Source: Octopus bimaculoides
Taxonomy: Eukaryota
NCBI RefSeq assembly: GCF_001194135.2
Contig: NC_068982.1
Location: 191,527,817-191,562,191 of the forward strand
Reading direction: 5' to 3'
DNA length: 34,375 nucleotides
The stretch's first letter is position 1. Each line of letters opens with the position of its first letter. Below, one piece after another: positions 1 to 34,375 of the stretch. The position numbers and the translations under genes were made by a program. The notes beneath the pieces are model-generated. The model saw only the letters and a program-made list of their open reading frames with translations, ran no database searches and was not told where the DNA came from.

Positions 1-61
<61 letters not shown>
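1..61. repeat. (TAT)n microsatellite
   Basis: Perfect TAT/ATT repeat from the window start. Confidence 0.98.
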
Positions 62-63
<2 letters not shown>

Positions 64-290
64 GGTGGCGAGCTGGCAGAATTGTTAGCACACCGGACAA
101 AATGCTTTGCAGCATTTCGTCCGTCTTCAGATTCTGAGTTCAAATTCCGCTGAGGTCGACTTTGTCTTTCACCCTCTCGGGGGTCAATAAATTAAGGACC
201 AATAAAACACTGGGGTCGATATAATCGACTAATCCACCTCCCCCAAAACTTCAGGCCTTGTGCCTTTAGCAGAAAGGATTATTATCATTA
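62..290 (+). mobile_element. tRNA-derived SINE, family A, near full length
   Basis: A-box-like GGCGAGCTGGCAGAATTGTTAGC, B-box GAGTTCAAATTCC, body GAGGTCGACTTTG..TTTCACCCTCTCGGGGGTCAATAAA. Alignable copies at 9023-9240, 18548-18727 and 26225-26434. Confidence 0.85.
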
Positions 291-13886: not shown

Positions 13887-14507
13887 GAAAATTCTTCTGA
13901 AGACTCAAACAGGTTTTAGACCATCCCAGAGAACCATTGATATGATCTTCACCTTGCGTCAACTCCAAGACAAGTGTCGTGAACAATACTAACCTCTGTA
14001 CATGACCTTCATTGATCTGCCCAAGGCGTTCGATCCCGTGTCAAGAGAAATTCTCTGGGATATTCCCTCTACCAATGGATACCCTCCGAAGTACATCTGC
14101 ATTCTAAGACTCCTCCATGATGGCATGCTTGCAACTATCCTGGCCAACCAAGGAACATCAGACCCTTCCCAAGTAAAAAACAGGAGTAAAACAGGGATGT
14201 GTAATTACTCCAACACTGTTTGCCATCTTCATCGCTACCATCCTGCACATCATTATGAAAGATCTTCCATCAGGTATCGAAACTTCAACCTTGCCCGTCT
14301 CAAGTCCAAAACCAAGATATCCTCTACCTCCCTGATCAAGTTCCAATATGCAGCTCTTTCGGAGGGAGACCTTCAACGGACCCTGATCGCCTTCAACCGA
14401 GCATACAGCACCCTTAGTCTCACCGTCAACTCTAAAAGACCCAGATTCTGTACCAACCAACCCTCAAACGACCCAGCCAGAAGAGAACTATTAATTAAGC
14501 TTGGAGA

Positions 14508-14611
14508 CACTAGCGTAGCTGGGGAGGGGAGAAGGGGCGGTACTTTTGCTGTAAGCAATATATGGTTTTTTGTGGGGTCCGGGGGCGGCACACACTCTAG
14601 CTACGCTAGTG
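14508..14611. mobile_element. 104-bp MITE, hAT-like, inserted in the LINE RT
   Basis: 13-bp perfect TIR CACTAGCGTAGCT/AGCTACGCTAGTG. Degenerate 8-bp TSD CTTGGAGA/CTCAGGGA. Excision restores the frame IKLGETTLESVDHFPYLGS. Confidence 0.85.
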
Positions 14612-14919
14612 CTCAGGGAAACGACCCTCGAAAGCGTGGACCACTTTCCTTATCTTGGGAGTCGTCTCTCATCAAATCTTGACCTGAGCAATGAGATTCA
14701 GTATCGTCTGAAGTGTGCTGGAACTGCCTTTGGCCGTCTCTACGACAGAATCTTTAAAGACCGTGACATCAGAACCGAAACCAAAATGGTTGTATACAAA
14801 GCAGTAGTCATCCGAACATTCCTTTTACACATCTGAAACCTGGACAACTTGCCGTCGCCATCGGAAAACGTTGGAAAAGTTTCATCAAAGATGTCTTCGA
14901 AGTAACCTGAACATTGGCT

Positions 14920-16097: not shown

Positions 16098-16296
16098 TAT
16101 TCAGGTGTACTGAATAGATAAAAGTTAAGGTGTACGAAACAGGTACCTGTTCAGGTATAAGTTCAAATGTACTCATCATGTATATCTTCAGGTGTACTAA
16201 ACACGTGTGTGTTCATGCCTACCAAACAAAAACATACTAAATAGGTATGTACGAATAAGTTCAGGTGTACCCAACAGGTGTGTGTTCAGGTGTGTC
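16098..16296 (+). repeat. Degenerate ~25-bp minisatellite GTTCAGGTGTACNNAACAGGTGTGT
   Basis: CAGGTG at 16102, 16189, 16262, 16275 and 16287, plus variants. Confidence 0.65.
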
Positions 16297-18547: not shown

Positions 18548-18727
18548 TGGTTTCAAATTTTGGCACAAGGCCAACAAGTTCGGGGGAGGGGGTATGAGTC
18601 GATAACATCGACCCCCAGAGCCCAACTGGTATTTAATTTATCGACCCCGAAAGGATGACAGGCAAAGTCGACCTCGGCAGAATTTGAACTCGGAACGCAA
18701 AGTTCGGCATGCTAACGATTCTTGCCT
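18548..18727 (-). mobile_element. SINE family A copy (partial second copy at ~18455-18530)
   Basis: TTTATCGACCCCGAAAGGATGA..AAAGTCGACCTCGGCAGAATTTGAACTC. Confidence 0.85.
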
Positions 18728-18829
18728 TTCGGCAATACGTATTCTAGAATAGGAACAATCCAGAAAAGATGAGTAAGGCCCCTGTGCAAGGATGACAAGC
18801 ACATTCATGAAGCGTTTCCTATTTTTTCA

Positions 18830-19324: not shown

Positions 19325-19502
19325 AAATGTTCTCCATCCGATCAACGTCGCCTGAACAGGTGGTTGCTGTAGCACACATGAGATGCCAAAGCAACAGGAT
19401 ATGAAGTGACTTGATCAAGAACGCAACGCATCTCCCCGTCTAGGAACTGAAACCCCGATCTCGCGATCTTGAGTACAACATCTTAACCAATAGACCATGC
19501 CG
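19325..19502 (-). mobile_element. Truncated SINE with tRNA head and family C-like body
   Basis: Minus strand: GGCATGGTCTATTGGTTAAGATG..GGTTTCAGTTCC..GTTGCGTTCTTGATCAAGTCAC..CGTTGATCGGAT. Confidence 0.6.
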
Positions 19503-19546
19503 AGAGGAATAATAATAATAATGATGATGATGATGATGATGATGAT

Positions 19547-21009
19547 ACTGTACTTAGAGACGGCAAGAGGAGGAATAGTAACTTAGCTATGTCATGGATC
19601 GACTATTGTAAGGCGTACGATATGATCCCACTTTCTTGGATTATGGAAAGTATGAACCTATTTGGTATTGCATCGAATGTTGGAAAAAGTATGGCGAATT
19701 GGAGGACGGATCTGACAGCATACGAAAGAAGTTTAGGGACAGTAGAAATTTGGAGGGGCATCTTCCAAGGGGACTGCCTGTCCCGACTGATCTTTGTACT
19801 GTGCATGATGCCACTAACACTGATTCTGAGGAAAGCAAAGGCTGGGTATGTATTCGAAAGCCGCCAACAAAAAGACAACCATTTGTTATTCATGGATGAC
19901 CTCAAACTTTATGGTAAAGATGAACCCTAAGTCAGTTCCCTCGTTGATACGGTATATACCTTCAGTGCTGATATCAGAATGGAGTTCGGACTGAGAAAGT
20001 GTGGTATGTTAGTCTTAAAGATAGGCAAAATCAAATGTATGGACAGGCTAACGATACCGTCGGAGGAGGTTATGAAGCAGGTAGAAGAGACGGGCTATAA
20101 GTACTTGGGGATTTTGGAAATGGATAAATTGATGGAGAAAGAAATGACAGAAAAATTTAAGGTGGAGTACTTGCGCAGACTGAGACTGATCNNNNNNNNN
20201 NNNNNNNNNNNNNNNNNNNNNNNNNNNNNNNNNNNNNNNNNNNNNNNNNNNNNNNNNNNNNNNNNNNNNNNNNNNNNNNNNNNNNNNNNNNNNNNNNNNN
20301 NNNNNNNNNNNNNNNNNNNNNNNNNNNNNNNNNNNNNNNNNNNNNNNNNNNNNNNNNNNNNNNNNNNNNNNNNNNNNNNNNNNNNNNNNNNNNNNNNNNN
20401 NNNNNNNNNNNNNNNNNNNNNNNNNNNNNNNNNNNNNNNNNNNNNNNNNNNNNNNNNNNNNNNNNNNNNNNNNNNNNNNNNNNNNNNNNNNNNNNNNNNN
20501 NNNNNNNNNNNNNNNNNNNNNNNNNNNNNNNNNNNNNNNNNNNNNNNNNNNNNNNNNNNNNNNNNNNNNNNNNNNNNNNNNNGATCCTGTGGTATTTCAT
20601 GATTCAGTGCGACCATGAGATAGAGAATAGGAAGCCGGATATAGTCTTAATTGAGAAACTATGCTGGATCATAGACATAGCATGCCCAGCTGACAACAAG
20701 GTATGCGATAAGGAAGAAAGAAAAGTCGAGAGATATGACAGGTTAGCTTGGGAGGTTAGGCAGTTGTGGTCGATGAAAAAGGTGGCAGTAGTACCAGTAA
20801 TTATCGGAACAGTGAGTAAAAATCTCGATAAGTACGTGGAACAAATAGGGGTTGCAATAAGGGTGGAGCACTTGCAGAAAACAGCATTGCTTGGAACCGC
20901 TCGAATACTCCGGATGGTGCCCGAAAAATAAGAGGTGTTACCTTAGTTCACTTATAGTGAACAGCTGACACCGTAGTACATCTCCAGGGTTAGAAGCTGT
21001 GCAAAGGCG
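19547..21009 (+). mobile_element. 5'-truncated R4/Dong-like RLE LINE (RT + RLE), gapped
   Basis: RT motifs WIDYCKAYDMIP, GIFQGDCLS, FMDD (19889-19900), YKYLG. After the gap, RLE RKPDIVLIEK..IIDIACP..KVERY..KTALLGTARILR*. Preceded by (TAA)(TGA)n and followed by (TAA)n. Confidence 0.92.
20192..20582. other. Assembly gap inside the LINE
   Basis: N run. Confidence 1.
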
Positions 21010-30150: not shown

Positions 30151-30465
30151 NNNNNNNNNNNNNNNNNNNNNNNNNNNNNNNNNNNNNNNNNNNNNNNNNN
30201 NNNNNNNNNNNNNNNNNNNNNNNNNNNNNNNNNNNNNNNNNNNNNNNNNNNNNNNNNNNNNNNNNNNNNNNNNNNNNNNNNNNNNNNNNNNNNNNNNNNN
30301 NNNNNNNNNNNNNNNNNNNNNNNNNNNNNNNNNNNNNNNNNNNNNNNNNNNNNNNNNNNNNNNNNNNNNNNNNNNNNNNNNNNNNNNNNNNNNNNNNNNN
30401 NNNNNNNNNNNNNNNNNNNNNNNNNNNNNNNNNNNNNNNNNNNNNNNNNNNNNNNNNNNNNNNNN
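30151..30465. other. Assembly gap
   Basis: N run. Confidence 1.
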
Positions 30466-30494
30466 ACTGTGAAAATAATATTATATTTTATAAG

Positions 30495-30726
30495 ACAGTT
30501 CCATATTTAAGAGATGAGGAATTATTTACATTTGACTGATATTTGTCCTCATCTTGTTTGTTGTTAACACAACGTTTCGGCTGATATATCCTTCAGCCTT
30601 CTTCAGGTGTCTTGGGGAAATTTCAAACCTGGGTTCTCATTCCTAAGGTATTTTTCGATGTTATTATTATTCAGGTCACTGCCTGGAATCGAACCACAAG
30701 ATTCCAAGTTCAATTCCAGGCAGTGA

Positions 30727-30760
<34 letters not shown>
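30495..30760 (-). mobile_element. Short non-autonomous element: Pol III B-box head (fold-back duplicated) + hammerhead ribozyme + 3' hairpin (Penelope/retrozyme-like)
   Basis: Minus strand: GGTTCGATTCC (30685-30695), (AAT)n, ~50-nt linker, hammerhead at 30566-30611, stem-loop at 30512-30554. No ORF. Confidence 0.7.
30566..30611 (-). ncRNA. Minimal type I hammerhead ribozyme
   Basis: GACAC-CUGAAGA-A-GGCUGA-AGGAUAUA-UCAGCC-GAAA-CG-U-U^GUGUU: intact core, 6-bp stem II, 5-bp helix I (one G.U) and palindromic ACGU stem III. Confidence 0.75.
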
Positions 30761-30764
<4 letters not shown>

Positions 30765-30949
30765 TGACTGTCTCCAGTGCTCAGATGCATTATGGCAGAT
30801 TGAAAATTTGGAAAAGAGTAAAAGAGGGAATGGAAAGCAGATATAAGTCAAGTAAAGAAAGACAGAAACGAAGGCTAGAATTTACAGAAGAAAACCTGAA
30901 AAGGAAACAGCAAAGGGTGCCATGTGAGGAATTGTGTTGGTGAATTTCA

Positions 30950-31060: not shown

Positions 31061-31747
31061 CATGGATGCAGAAGCTCACACAAACAAACAAACACACACC
31101 TTCCCGTAACAACTTCTACATACACATATACATGTTCACACACATACACACACATTCAGAGTTGTTCATCATCTTGAAATACTTAGGATGTTAATTAAAA
31201 AGCACTTTGTAATTTGATTATTATATAATCTTAATTAAATATATTTTCTAATTAACAGATTTTCACGTGTAATATATATATATATAACACTGAAAGTTAA
31301 TCTCAAAATTAATTATGTTAATTATGGCTGTTTATAAAGAAACAGCACTGATCCAGACAGAACTGCTTAACGAATGCAAGCGTTAGATGATAGGATTTCA
31401 CATAATAATATAGTGAGATAACGAACCGATAAACTAAAGTTATCCATGCAATTTGTAGAAAGAATCTCCCTGTTTAGAGCTTTCTGTCTTTTCACATTTT
31501 CATGTTTAATGACAGAATCTGACCTTGTGGTTAGGGTGTTCGATTTACAATCACCCTGTCATTTGCTAAAAGGAATTGCAAGGGTTTACATGTTGGGCAT
31601 GCAAAGAATGCATGTATGTGTATACGTGTGACAAACATGTAAAGTGCGTGCGTGTGTATGTATGAGTGTGCATGTGTGTGCGTGTGTGTGTGTGTGTGTG
31701 TGTATTTATGTGTGTGTTTTTGTGAATGTGTATACTTTTATGTATGG

Positions 31748-31794
<47 letters not shown>

Positions 31795-33901
31795 GAGAGA
31801 GAGAGTCAGATTAGATGAAATGCAGTTTGGGTTTGTGCCAGGGAAAAGCACCACTGATGCTATATTTCTGGTAAAACAGTTGCAGGAGAAATACCTAGCC
31901 AAAGATAAATCTCTGTACCTGGCTTTCGTTGATATGGAGAAAGCCTTTGACAGGGTTCCTCGCTCCCTTATCCGGTGGTCAATGAGGAAACTAGAGATAG
32001 AAGAATGGTTAGTGAGAGCTGTACAAGCCATGTACAGGGATGCTGTCAGTAAGTCCTCCAGGCAATAACACCGGAATTTAAGACAGGATGCCCCTGGGAG
32101 CTCCTGTGTGCTGATGACCTTGCACTAATTGCTGAGTCACTATCGGAACTGGAGAAGTTTCAGGTGTGGAAGCAAGGACTAGAATTGAAGGGCCTTGGAG
32201 TCAACCTAGCTAAAACCAAAGTCCTAATGAGGTAGACAAACCACAAATCCCTTCCAGTAGATGGCCCTGCTCGATCTGTAGAAAAGGCGTAGGCAGAAAC
32301 TCTATAAGATGCACCAAGTGCAAGCTATGGACACATAAGAGGTGCAGCAATATCAAAGCAAGGCTAACTAGGAAGTTAGTTTTTGTATGTGGCAGATGTT
32401 CAGGTGCAATAAACACTGTAAATGTGCAGAAAACGACTTCTGCCACATTCCAGGGAGAAGAACTAGAAGTGGTTGATAGCTTCCGATATCTGGGTGACCA
32501 GGTTAGTAGTGGAGGTGGGTGCGCTGAAAGTGTAGCTGCTAGAATAAGAATAGCCTGGGCAAAGTTCAGAGAGCTCTTACCTCTGCTGGTGACAAAGGGA
32601 CTCTCACTCAGAGTAAAAGGCAGACTGTATGACGCATGCATACGAACAGCCATGCTACATGGCAGTGAAACATGGGCCGTGACTGCTGAGGACATGCGTA
32701 AGCTCGCAAGGAATGAAGCCAGTATGCTCCAATGGATGTGTAATGTCAGTGTGCATACTAGACAGAGTGTAAGTACCTTGAGAGAAAAGTTGAACCTAAG
32801 AAGCATCAGTTGTGGTGTGCAAGAGAGACGATTGCACTGGTAGGGTCATTNNNNNNNNNNNNNNNNNNNNNNNNNNNNNNNNNNNNNNNNNNNNNNNNNN
32901 NNNNNNNNNNNNNNNNNNNNNNNNNNNNNNNNNNNNNNNNNNNNNNNNNNNNNNNNNNNNNNNNNNNNNNNNNNNNNNNNNNNNNNNNNNNNNNNNNNNN
33001 NNNNNNNNNNNNNNNNNNNNNNNNNNNNNNNNNNNNNNNNNNNNNNNNNNNNNNNNNNNNNNNNNNNNNNNNNNNNNNNNNNNNNNNNNNNNNNNNNNNN
33101 NNNNNNNNNNNNNNNNNNNNNNNNNNNNNNNNNNNNNNNNNNNNNNNNNNNNNNNNNNNNNNNNNNNNNNNNNNNNNNNNNNNNNNNNNNNNNNNNNNNN
33201 NNNNNNNNNNNNNNNNNNNNNNNNNNNNNNNNNNNNNNNNNNNNNNNNNNNNNNNNNNNNNNNNNNNNNNNNNNNNNNNNNNNNNNNNNNNNNNNNNNNN
33301 NNNNNNNNNNNNNNNNNNNNNNNNNNNNNNNNNNNNNNNNNNNNNNNNNNNNNNNNNNNNNNNNNNNNNNNNNNNNNNNNNNNNNNNNNNNNNNNNNNNN
33401 NNNNNNNNNNNNNNNNNNNNNNNNNNNNNNNNNNNNNNNNNNNNNNNNNNNNNNNNNNNNNNNNNNNNNNNNNNNNNNNNNNNNNNNNNNNNNNNNNNNN
33501 NNNNNNNNNNNNNNNNNNNNNNNNNNNNNNNNNNNNNNNNNNNNNNNNNNNNNNNNNNNNNNNNNNNNNNNNNNNNNNNNNNNNNNNNNNNNNNNNNNNN
33601 NNNNNNNNNNNNNNNNNNNNNNNNNNNNNNNNNNNNNNNNNNNNNNNNNNNNNNNNNNNNNNNNNNNNNNGTGGCATGTAAAATACACCATTTTGAGCGT
33701 GGCCGTTGCCAGTACCGCGTGACTGGCCCTCATGCCGGTGGCACGTAAAAGCACCCACTACACTCTCAGTGTGGTTGGCATTAGGAAGGGCATCCAGCTG
33801 GAGCCTGGTGCAGCCTTCTGGTTTCACCAGTCCTCAGTCAAATCATCCAACCCATGCTAGCATGGAAAGCGGACGTTGAACGATGATGATGATGATGATG
33901 A
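31795..33901 (+). mobile_element. 5'-truncated RTE-like LINE (RT with internal PHD-type finger), gapped, with 3' UTR and (GAT)n tail
   Basis: QFGFVPGKSTTDAIF, AFVDMEKAFDRVP, LLCADDL, C4HC3 cluster at 32268-32399, VVDSFRYLGD, GSETW. 91-bp deletion relative to the 34092 copy. Joining the 3' UTR across the gap is inferred. Confidence 0.9.
32851..33670. other. Assembly gap
   Basis: N run. Confidence 1.
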
Positions 33902-34091: not shown

Positions 34092-34375
34092 AGGGTCCCC
34101 CGATCCCTTATCTGATGGTCAATGAGGAAACTTGGGATAGAAGAATGGTTAGTGAGAGCTGTGCGAGCCATGTACAGAGATGCTGCCAGTAAGGTGAGGG
34201 TTGGAAATGAGTACAGCAATGAATTCCGGGTAGAGGTAGGGGTCCACCAAGGTTCCGTCCTCAGCCCCCTATTATTTACCATAGTCCTCCAGGCAATCAC
34301 AGAGGAGTTCAAGACAGGTTGCCCCTGGGAGCTCCTCTATGCTGATGACCTTGCCCTAATTGCGGAGTCACTATC
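34092..34375 (+). mobile_element. Second copy of the RTE-like LINE RT (runs off the window)
   Basis: RVPRSLI*WSMRKLGIEEW..GVHQGSVLSPLLF..LLYADDLALIAESL, closely similar to 31950-32145. Confidence 0.92.

What the first reader, a model, noticed from the sequence alone, without database searches (positions are those of the whole stretch)
30566..30611. Hammerhead ribozyme inside a tRNA-headed, non-coding retroelement (candidate Penelope-dependent ribozyme-SINE/retrozyme)
Seen (minus strand): GACAC CUGAAGA A GGCUGA[AGGAUAUA]UCAGCC GAAA CG U U^GUGUU, with all core nucleotides, stem II and helix I present. Predicted cut lies between 30571 and 30570. A perfect Pol III B-box lies about 75 nt upstream. 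Known: Penelope-like elements and metazoan retrozymes carry minimal type I hammerheads whose palindromic stem III (here ACGU) works as a dimer. An extra A after A9 is tolerated in the CChMVd viroid hammerhead. Schistosoma Sm-alpha is a precedent for Pol III promoter plus hammerhead. Inference: a Pol III-transcribed element whose RNA end is set by self-cleavage and which borrows a Penelope RT/GIY-YIG machinery; I know of no description in cephalopods. Caveats: U at position 17 cleaves less efficiently, the A-box is missing in this copy, and no PLE ORF is in the window.
Basis: partly seen in the sequence, partly recalled or inferred. Interest (0 to 1): 0.9.

Follow-up and report, generated by a model that had tools for sequence, protein, structure and literature searches.

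The report
Lone Penelope-type minimal hammerhead ribozyme relic
The sequence holds a real minimal hammerhead ribozyme of the kind Penelope-like retrotransposons leave across animal genomes, but nothing shows that it belongs to a new tRNA-headed mobile element, so it is an ordinary retrotransposon relic.

Summary
The motif is at 30566-30611 on the minus strand exactly as described. It is not a chance match. My descriptor finds only this site in the window and none in about 97 Mb of simulated sequence. A covariance model built from seven unrelated minimal hammerheads ranks it first (27.5 bits, E about 3e-6).

It has every feature published for the minimal hammerhead (min-HHR) of metazoan Penelope-like elements (PLEs):
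- an open 5-bp helix I and a 6-bp helix II closed by G10.1-C11.1;
- one unpaired base after A9;
- no loop 3 and a palindromic ACGU.

A near-identical min-HHR lies about 85 nt downstream of RT and GIY-YIG-like reading frames on a metagenome contig (L017).

The "tRNA-headed Pol III retroelement" reading is not supported:
- there is no tRNA and no A-box;
- the B-box sits inside an 81-nt palindrome that takes in the flanking ATT/AAT microsatellite;
- the window has no second copy, no tandem repeat and no PLE reading frame.

The best reading is a solitary, 5'-truncated PLE 3' fragment next to a microsatellite. It is probably inactive here because min-HHRs cleave only as dimers. I could not retrieve other copies from the source genome, so linkage across copies is untested. 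A 315-N assembly gap starts 100 nt downstream. Known kind, low interest.

The parts
30566..30611 (-). Complete minimal type I hammerhead (min-HHR): helix I, core, bulge, helix II, GAAA, palindromic ACGU and U17
   Evidence: Read directly; fold; descriptor; independent covariance model, 27.5 bits, E about 3e-6
30607..30611 (-). Helix I, 5' strand GACAC; it pairs with GUGUU at 30566-30570 (5 bp including a terminal G-U; open-ended, no loop 1)
30600..30606 (-). Core box CUGAAGA (C3 to A9)
30599..30599 (-). Unpaired A between A9 and G10.1, a conserved trait of PLE min-HHRs
   Evidence: PMC4209133; all 12 min-HHRs found in fetched loci carry such a base
30579..30598 (-). Helix II GGCUGA/UCAGCC (6 bp, closed by G10.1-C11.1) with 8-nt loop AGGAUAUA
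30571..30578 (-). GAAA, then C15.2, G16.2, U16.1 and U17. A15.1-C-G-U16.1 is the palindrome ACGU, which can form helix III only between two molecules. The predicted cut is 3' of U17, between 30571 and 30570.
   Evidence: PMC4209133 Fig. 1 legend and text
30612..30660 (-). 49 nt of unique sequence between the (AAT)n run and the hammerhead; proposed 5'-truncated start of the PLE-derived fragment
   Evidence: no other copy in the window; inference
30466..30565 (-). 100 nt downstream of the cut site, up to the assembly gap; the rest of the fragment
30151..30465 (.). Run of 315 N (assembly gap) that could hide the 3' end or a tandem or inverted partner copy
   Evidence: PLE insertions often break short-read assemblies (PMC8557442)
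30661..30741 (.). Adjacent palindrome, judged a separate feature. Its arms are 33/35 complementary and include the AAT/ATT microsatellite, with a 12-nt loop. The B-box GGTTCGATTCC is at 30685-30695(-).
   Evidence: (-57.1 kcal/mol, z = -13)
30731..30760 (.). (AAT)10 microsatellite on the + strand (ATT on the - strand), continuous with the outer arm of the palindrome

Best explanation
This is a solitary copy of the minimal hammerhead ribozyme that Penelope-like retrotransposons (PLEs) carry in their terminal repeats. It most likely arrived as a 5'-truncated 3' end of a PLE, or of a short PLE-derived non-autonomous copy, that integrated at or beside an (AAT)n microsatellite.

In the parent element the ribozyme has no helix III of its own. 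Two copies on one tandem read-through transcript pair through the palindrome ACGU to build a shared helix III. Each core then cuts 3' of position 17, which releases unit-length RNA for reverse transcription by the PLE RT and GIY-YIG endonuclease.

At this locus there is one copy only, so it is most likely a catalytically silent relic. The neighbouring B-box belongs to a separate palindromic, tRNA-like fragment carrying the microsatellite.

Shown here: the motif, its non-chance status and its fit to the PLE min-HHR class. Inferred: its origin by PLE retrotransposition, the truncation point and its inactivity.
For: - The motif is complete and matches every published min-HHR trait that was not part of the original search descriptor: a base between 9 and 10.1, the G10.1-C11.1 pair, palindromic 15.2-16.2, a helix I of 4-5 bp and a helix II of 6-8 bp (PMC4209133).
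- It is not chance.
- Metagenome contigs L017 and L052 carry a min-HHR with the same extra A, the same helix II and the same GAAACGUU. In L017 it starts about 85 nt downstream of the stop of frameshifted reading frames on the same strand. These show weak RVT_1 (E = 0.015), the motifs GLPKIHKPGYPLRPIVS and YVDD and a GIY-YIG top hit (E = 0.007). That order is the RT-then-endonuclease order of canonical PLEs.
- The literature says most genomic min-HHRs are solitary motifs, probably related to truncated PLEs, and that monomers do not cleave.
- Penelope elements are abundant and recently active in octopus, and PLEs have an insertion bias for microsatellites.
- The window has no second copy and no tandem repeat.
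Against: - No PLE reading frame is in the window (tblastn), and the flanks of the hammerhead match nothing I could fetch. The PLE origin therefore rests on the ribozyme class alone.
- The RT and GIY-YIG hits in L017 are below Pfam's curated thresholds, and the GIY-YIG hit needed one frameshift to be bridged.
- The 315-N gap 100 nt downstream could hide a partner copy.
- No other copy from the source genome was retrieved, so family membership, copy number and boundaries are unknown.
- The source species was not verified with the tools.
Confidence: 0.7

Rival explanations
1. This is a composite SINE whose tRNA-derived Pol III head (B-box at 30685-30695) drives transcription through the hammerhead, and which is mobilised by PLE enzymes.
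For: An exact B-box lies 74 nt upstream on the same strand, the only exact match in the window. Schistosoma Sm-alpha and Sj-alpha are Pol III SINE-like elements with hammerheads (PMC6765202). Octopus genomes hold hundreds of unclassified SINE families.
Against: - There is no tRNA fold, no Rfam tRNA hit at E<=10 and no A-box.
- The B-box is one arm of a palindrome that includes the microsatellite, and a decayed mirror B-box sits on the other strand.
- An (AAT)n tail-like run lies between head and ribozyme.
- B-box-like SINE debris is dense in this window: a tRNA-like SINE at 61-290 and four B-box matches with at most one mismatch.
- Sm-alpha carries a canonical hammerhead, not a min-HHR.
Confidence: 0.08
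2. This is the edge or a solo monomer of a non-LTR retrozyme, that is, a short tandem repeat with one hammerhead per unit that is expressed as circular RNA. The neighbouring units would be lost in the assembly gap.
For: A 315-N gap starts 100 nt downstream. Solo monomers of retrozymes exist, and retrozymes are proposed derivatives of PLE terminal repeats (bioRxiv 10.64898/2026.07.22.740005). Molluscs such as mussels carry about 5000 copies (PMC7229834).
Against: No tandem repeat is detectable on either side. Retrozymes are defined by tandem repeats carrying type I hammerheads, mostly canonical ones. That paper sets min-HHRs apart as the atypical PLE/Terminon class.
Confidence: 0.12
3. This is a chance match to a short, degenerate motif.
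For: Only about 12 core bases are fixed. Rfam models give no hit.
Against: There were 0 hits in about 97 Mb of simulated sequence. The hand estimate at this stem quality is about 0.01 per 2.7-Gb genome. The independent covariance model gives E about 3e-6. Three traits that are not part of the core are also present. Rfam equally misses the PLE-linked control.
Confidence: 0.01
4. This is a domesticated host ribozyme acting in cis on a host transcript.
For: None specific. Isolated hammerheads with host roles are known in amniotes (own knowledge).
Against: Monomeric min-HHRs show no detectable cleavage in vitro. The surroundings are transposon debris and microsatellites. No conservation data are available.
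Confidence: 0.03

Closest known systems
Minimal hammerheads (min-HHR) of metazoan Penelope-like elements (Cervera & de la Pena 2014, PMC4209133; Lunse, Weinberg & Breaker 2016, cited in PMC6765202)
   Same: Type I topology with an open helix I of 5 bp. Long helix II (6 bp) closed by G10.1-C11.1. One unpaired base after A9. No loop 3. Palindromic A15.1-C-G-U16.1, so helix III forms only in a dimer. It occurs as a solitary genomic motif, as most copies do.
   Different: No PLE terminal repeat or RT/GIY-YIG reading frame is visible at this locus. The copy family in the same genome and dimer cleavage were not examined.
The PLE-linked min-HHR on metagenome contigs L017 (Ga0126337_10008751) and L052 (OMLO01000704.1)
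   Same: CUGAnGA-A-GGCUGA...UCAGCC-GAAACGUU^ is identical apart from N7, loop 2 and helix I.
   Different: Loop 2 has 4 nt rather than 8. Helix I is UCCC/GGGA. The flanks are unrelated. In L017 the ribozyme starts about 85 nt downstream of RT and GIY-YIG-like frames; here it follows a microsatellite.
Non-LTR retrozymes of animals (Cervera & de la Pena 2020, PMC7229834)
   Same: Non-coding, AT-rich context with a type I hammerhead. They are thought to derive from PLE terminal repeats.
   Different: Retrozymes are tandem repeats of 150-450 bp, usually with canonical hammerheads. Here there is a single min-HHR and no repeat unit.
Schistosoma Sm-alpha / Sj-alpha SINE-like elements (Ferbeyre 1998 and Laha 2000, as summarised in PMC6765202)
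   Same: A Pol III B-box-like sequence lies upstream of a hammerhead on the same strand.
   Different: Sm-alpha has a working Pol III promoter, a canonical hammerhead and a tandem organisation. Here there is no A-box and no tRNA-like fold, and the B-box is buried in a palindrome.
Rfam Hammerhead_1 (RF00163), reported at 235 loci in the giant squid genome (PMC6962438)
   Same: The same catalytic core and type I topology; a cephalopod precedent for genomic hammerheads.
   Different: This site does not reach any Rfam hammerhead model even at E<=10, because it lacks helix III/loop 3 and the loop-loop contacts.

Membership tests
PLE-type minimal hammerhead (min-HHR) | Conserved core: C3-U4-G5-A6-N7-G8-A9, G12-A13-A14, A15.1, U16.1 and H17 | tested here: met
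   CUGAAGA ... GAAA ... U U, read directly
PLE-type minimal hammerhead (min-HHR) | Type I topology with a short open helix I (4-5 bp) and a long helix II (6-8 bp) closed by G10.1-C11.1 | tested here: met
   Helix I is 5 bp and helix II is 6 bp with G-C closing; criteria from PMC4209133
PLE-type minimal hammerhead (min-HHR) | One unpaired nucleotide between A9 and G10.1 | tested here: met
   A at 30599; present in all 12 min-HHRs found in fetched loci
PLE-type minimal hammerhead (min-HHR) | No loop 3 or a tiny one; positions 15.2-16.2 palindromic, so helix III forms between two copies | tested here: met
   A-C-G-U is self-complementary. RNAcofold does not itself predict this 4-bp helix.
PLE-type minimal hammerhead (min-HHR) | Located in a PLE terminal repeat, next to an RT/GIY-YIG reading frame | tested here: not met
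   No PLE-like reading frame in the window (tblastn with the L017 frames). The literature states that most copies are solitary, so this does not exclude membership of the ribozyme class.
PLE-type minimal hammerhead (min-HHR) | Belongs to a family of copies in the same genome with compensatory changes in helices I and II | not testable with these tools
   No copy from the source genome could be fetched
PLE-type minimal hammerhead (min-HHR) | Self-cleavage as a dimer, none as a monomer | not testable with these tools
   Needs in vitro transcription
Non-LTR retrozyme | Head-to-tail tandem repeats of 150-450 bp, each with a hammerhead | tested here: not met
   Self-BLAST and Tandem Repeats Finder find no second unit. 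A 315-N gap leaves a loophole.
Non-LTR retrozyme | Canonical type I hammerhead (helix I about 6 bp with loop 1, helix II about 4 bp, short helix III) | tested here: not met
   Open helix I, 6-bp helix II, no helix III; no Rfam hammerhead hit
Non-LTR retrozyme | Expressed as unit-length linear and circular RNA | not testable with these tools
   No transcript data
tRNA-derived Pol III SINE with hammerhead (Sm-alpha-like) | tRNA-like head with both an A-box and a B-box | tested here: not met
   The B-box is present, but there is no A-box, no tRNA by ARAGORN and no Rfam tRNA hit at E<=10
tRNA-derived Pol III SINE with hammerhead (Sm-alpha-like) | Head and ribozyme are parts of one repeat unit in many copies | not testable with these tools
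   No other copies are available. Within this copy the head is a palindrome ending in an (AAT)n run.
Rfam Hammerhead_1/3/II/HH9/HH10 | Reaches the family's covariance-model score | tested here: not met
   No hammerhead hit at gathering score or at E<=10; the same holds for the PLE-linked control

The most novel reading that the evidence does not exclude
The hammerhead segment and the tRNA-like B-box fragment could be two modules of a so far undescribed cephalopod SINE family. Such a family would borrow the ribozyme-bearing 3' end of a Penelope-like element. This copy would have its head rearranged into a palindrome.
Probability: 0.07. Interest if true: 0.55.

Novelty: new member of a known kind. 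Interest (0 to 1): 0.2.

Why it matters
It adds one more documented instance of the Penelope-type minimal hammerhead, in what is probably an octopus genome. These motifs escape Rfam-based annotation: Rfam missed both this site and a PLE-linked control. Hammerhead counts in published genome papers therefore understate them. Beyond that it is an expected by-product of PLE activity. It would matter more only if a genome-wide survey showed that the ribozyme segment is regularly fused to a Pol III head.

Tried and rejected
- Rfam at gathering score and at E<=10 on 321-nt and 81-nt slices gave no hammerhead. I rejected this as evidence against the motif because the L017 control is also missed.
- A six-frame peptide query of the hammerhead segment, meant to fish out other genomic copies, gave no hits.
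- The window ORF 13993-14679 as a protein query gave nothing at my cut-off of E<=1e-10, which was too strict and wasted a search.
- Exact-product look-ups of two window ORFs were not on record.
- An RTE reverse-transcriptase query gave at most 80% identity. The two contigs fetched are metagenome scaffolds. One (L074) matches the window only across the shared RTE element, and neither matches the hammerhead region, so neither yields another copy.
- tblastn of the L017 PLE frames against the window gave nothing.
- A 20-nt palindrome-arm pattern gave 2 chance-level hits in GTDB genomes, neither a tRNA, and none in IMG/VR.
- RNAcofold of two copies predicts a strand-swapped helix I/II dimer, not the ACGU helix III. 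This is uninformative for a 4-bp helix.
- The second covariance-model hit at 16170-16196 is a GTACACCTGAA short repeat, not a ribozyme.
- Covariation counted on the seven-sequence alignment is circular, because the sequences were selected for pairing. I do not use it as evidence.
- The three lake-metagenome min-HHR-like sites (L023, L047, L053) sit on GC-rich, bacterial-looking contigs without PLE frames. I do not count them as PLE support.

Full report
**Observation.** On the minus strand, 30611-30566 reads GACAC CUGAAGA A GGCUGA[AGGAUAUA]UCAGCC GAAA C G U U^GUGUU. All invariant hammerhead core positions are present. Helix I has 5 bp, including a terminal G-U. Helix II has 6 bp and is closed by G10.1-C11.1. 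RNAfold returns exactly these two helices as the minimum-energy structure (-14.4 kcal/mol, z = -3.2). The B-box GGTTCGATTCC is at 30695-30685(-), 74 nt upstream.

**Is it chance?** I wrote a descriptor modelled on the published min-HHR descriptor: helix I >=4 bp, CUGANGA, 0-1 bulge, helix II >=4 bp, loop 3-12 nt, GAAA, palindromic A-N(0-4)N-U, H17.
- It finds exactly one site in the window, which is the candidate.
- It finds none in 300 first-order Markov windows and none in a further 78 Mb.
- A hand calculation with the window's base composition gives about 8e-10 per base and strand for the relaxed descriptor. That is about 5e-5 per window and a handful per 2.7-Gb genome.
- At the candidate's actual stem quality, with the G10.1-C11.1 pair, the estimate is about 0.01 per genome.
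- The same descriptor finds 12 sites in 0.36 Mb of fetched loci, and all 12 have the one-base bulge although the bulge was optional.
- A covariance model (R1) built from seven of those sites, none from the window and with different stems, was run over the window with filters off. It returns 30566-30611(-) as the best hit (27.5 bits, E about 3e-6 with rough calibration).
- The next hit (16 bits) is a GTACACCTGAA short repeat.

**Why Rfam is silent.** No hammerhead family is reported at gathering score or at E<=10, even on an 81-nt slice. The min-HHR in L017, which lies next to PLE-like frames, is equally invisible. Rfam models require helix III/loop 3, so this negative carries no weight.

**What kind of hammerhead.** Cervera and de la Pena (PMC4209133) describe the metazoan PLE min-HHR as follows:
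- a larger helix II (7-8 bp in the Schistosoma families, 6 bp in the Drosophila virilis variant);
- a conserved G10.1-C11.1 pair;
- palindromic 15.2-16.2;
- no need for helix III, because two copies form a shared helix III.

The candidate meets every one of these. The 'extra A' and the missing stem III are therefore family hallmarks, not blemishes. U17 is also usual in the ACGU subclass: L017, L052 and L023 all read GAAACGUU^.

**Link to Penelope-like elements.** A metagenome scan for CTGANGANGGCTGA-N(4-12)-TCAGCCGAAAC gave 66 loci.
- Most are classical bacterial or phage hammerheads with a full helix III.
- L017 and L052, apparently the same locus from two projects, carry UCCC CUGAUGA A GGCUGA[AGGU]UCAGCC GAAACGUU^GGGA.
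- In L017 the motif starts about 85 nt downstream of the stop of a string of frameshifted frames on the same strand.
- These frames contain GLPKIHKPGYPLRPIVS and YVDD, with a weak RVT_1 hit (E = 0.015).
- They also contain GAIYSIPCKDCDKSYIEET...RLKEHQ. After one frameshift is bridged, GIY-YIG is the top Pfam hit (E = 0.007, below threshold).
- RT followed by a C-terminal GIY-YIG domain, with a hammerhead just downstream, is the canonical PLE layout.
- I recognise the two RT motifs as PLE-typical from my own knowledge. This was not tested against a PLE reference.

**The locus itself.**
- tblastn with the L017 frames finds no PLE coding remnant in the window.
- Self-BLAST at word size 7 and Tandem Repeats Finder find no second copy and no repeat unit.
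- The hammerhead flanks (30612-30660 and 30466-30565) match nothing else in the window or in any fetched locus.
- A 315-N gap begins 100 nt downstream.
- Reverse-transcriptase fragments elsewhere in the window (19487-19927, 31643-32065 and 34116-34373, plus a PHD finger at 32214-32840) are on the other strand and look like ordinary LINE reverse transcriptases.

**The 'tRNA head'.**
- ARAGORN finds no tRNA in the window, and Rfam gives no tRNA hit at E<=10 in 30480-30800.
- The B-box lies in one arm of a hairpin: (ATT)10-CAGGTCACTGCCTGGAATTGAAC-[12 nt]-GGTTCGATTCCAGGCAGTGACCTG-(AAT)3. It folds at -57.1 kcal/mol, z = -13.
- The arms are 33/35 complementary. One of the two differences is CG to CA inside the mirrored B-box.
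- The microsatellite flanks are inverted, not direct. The unit that was duplicated is therefore about 23 nt of tRNA-3'-end-like sequence plus an (AAT)n tail.
- The hammerhead segment begins right after that tail.
- The tRNA-like SINE at 61-290 ends in an ATT-rich run, and PLEs are reported to prefer microsatellites as targets.
- The simplest reading is two separate elements: a rearranged retroposon end with its tail, and a truncated PLE end inserted at or beside the tail.
- How the palindrome itself arose is unexplained.

**Mechanism.** In the parent element, tandem or terminal-repeat read-through RNA carries two min-HHRs. Their ACGU palindromes pair to form a shared helix III, and each core cuts 3' of position 17. 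The unit-length RNA is then reverse-transcribed and integrated by the RT and GIY-YIG protein. Single min-HHRs showed no detectable cleavage in vitro, and dimers cleaved only weakly. Here only one copy is visible, so the locus is most likely inert. These last steps are inference from the family, not shown for this sequence.

**What could not be done.** None of the collections hold the source genome. Four routes to other copies failed:
- a six-frame peptide search;
- searches with window reverse-transcriptase sequences;
- exact-product look-ups;
- contigs fetched through the reverse-transcriptase hits.

I also did not verify the species.

**Comparison with the literature and novelty.** The ribozyme class, its dimer mode, its PLE association and its mass occurrence as solitary motifs in invertebrate genomes have been known since 2014. 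Hammerhead_1 loci were reported in the giant squid genome. Penelope elements are abundant, ancient and recently active in octopuses. Canonical PLE clades universally carry hammerheads. This is a new instance of a known kind.

**Verdict.** The PLE-type, dimer-dependent hammerhead reading is supported. The tRNA-headed SINE or retrozyme reading is not supported. Interest is low (0.2). The residual novel reading, a PLE-tailed SINE family, has a probability of about 0.07.

Noticed in passing
window 30661-30741: An 81-nt near-perfect palindrome. Its arms include an inverted ATT/AAT microsatellite and a tRNA-3'-end-like 23-mer with a B-box. It gives sub-threshold hits to miRNA hairpin models (mir-5444, 48 bits against a gathering score of 90). 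Its origin is unresolved: possibly two head-to-head truncated retroposon ends, or a fold-back duplication.
   Followed up: partly
window 18724-18826 (+): A full-length match to U6 snRNA (73.5 bits, E = 5e-17) with a poorly paired 5' stem. It could be a U6 gene, a retropseudogene or a U6-derived SINE. I did not examine its promoter or flanks.
   Followed up: no
window 61-290 (+), with microsatellites at 1-60 and 300-690: A tRNA-like SINE that starts GGTGGCGAGCTGGCAGAA, has a GAGTTCAAATTCC B-box and ends in an ATT-rich run. It is preceded by (TAT)n and followed by long CTT/GTT/ATT/ATC microsatellites. ARAGORN does not call it as a tRNA.
   Followed up: no
window 31643-32840 (+) and 34116-34373 (+): Two copies of an RTE-like LINE (RVT_1 hits, with a PHD finger at 32214-32840). 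The best database relatives are only 80% identical or less. They include metagenome scaffolds and one record labelled Escherichia coli, which is probably host contamination in those data sets.
   Followed up: partly
L001-L073 (metagenome and IMG/VR contigs): Dozens of bacterial or phage hammerheads share the exact helix II GGCUGA/UCAGCC and an extra U after A9, together with a full helix III. The one-base bulge after A9 is therefore not confined to eukaryotic PLE ribozymes.
   Followed up: no
L023 2029-2073(-); also L047 and L053: A min-HHR-like motif (CUGAAGA C GGCUGAG..CUCAGCC GAAACGUU^GGAUAG) is conserved on three GC-rich, bacterial-looking lake-metagenome contigs that have no PLE frames. 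It may be a prokaryotic minimal hammerhead.
   Followed up: partly
L001, L009/L035, L016/L061, L055, L066: These contigs, which I recognise by name as termite-gut metagenome contigs, carry a descriptor-found min-HHR of the GAAACAUGU type in addition to the pattern-matched hammerhead site. Their helices I and II differ from contig to contig and they have no long ORFs. They look like host-genome PLE debris inside gut metagenomes.
   Followed up: partly
window 16100-16280 (-): A cluster of short GTACACCTGAA-containing repeats. It produced the second-best, spurious hit of the min-HHR model.
   Followed up: partly
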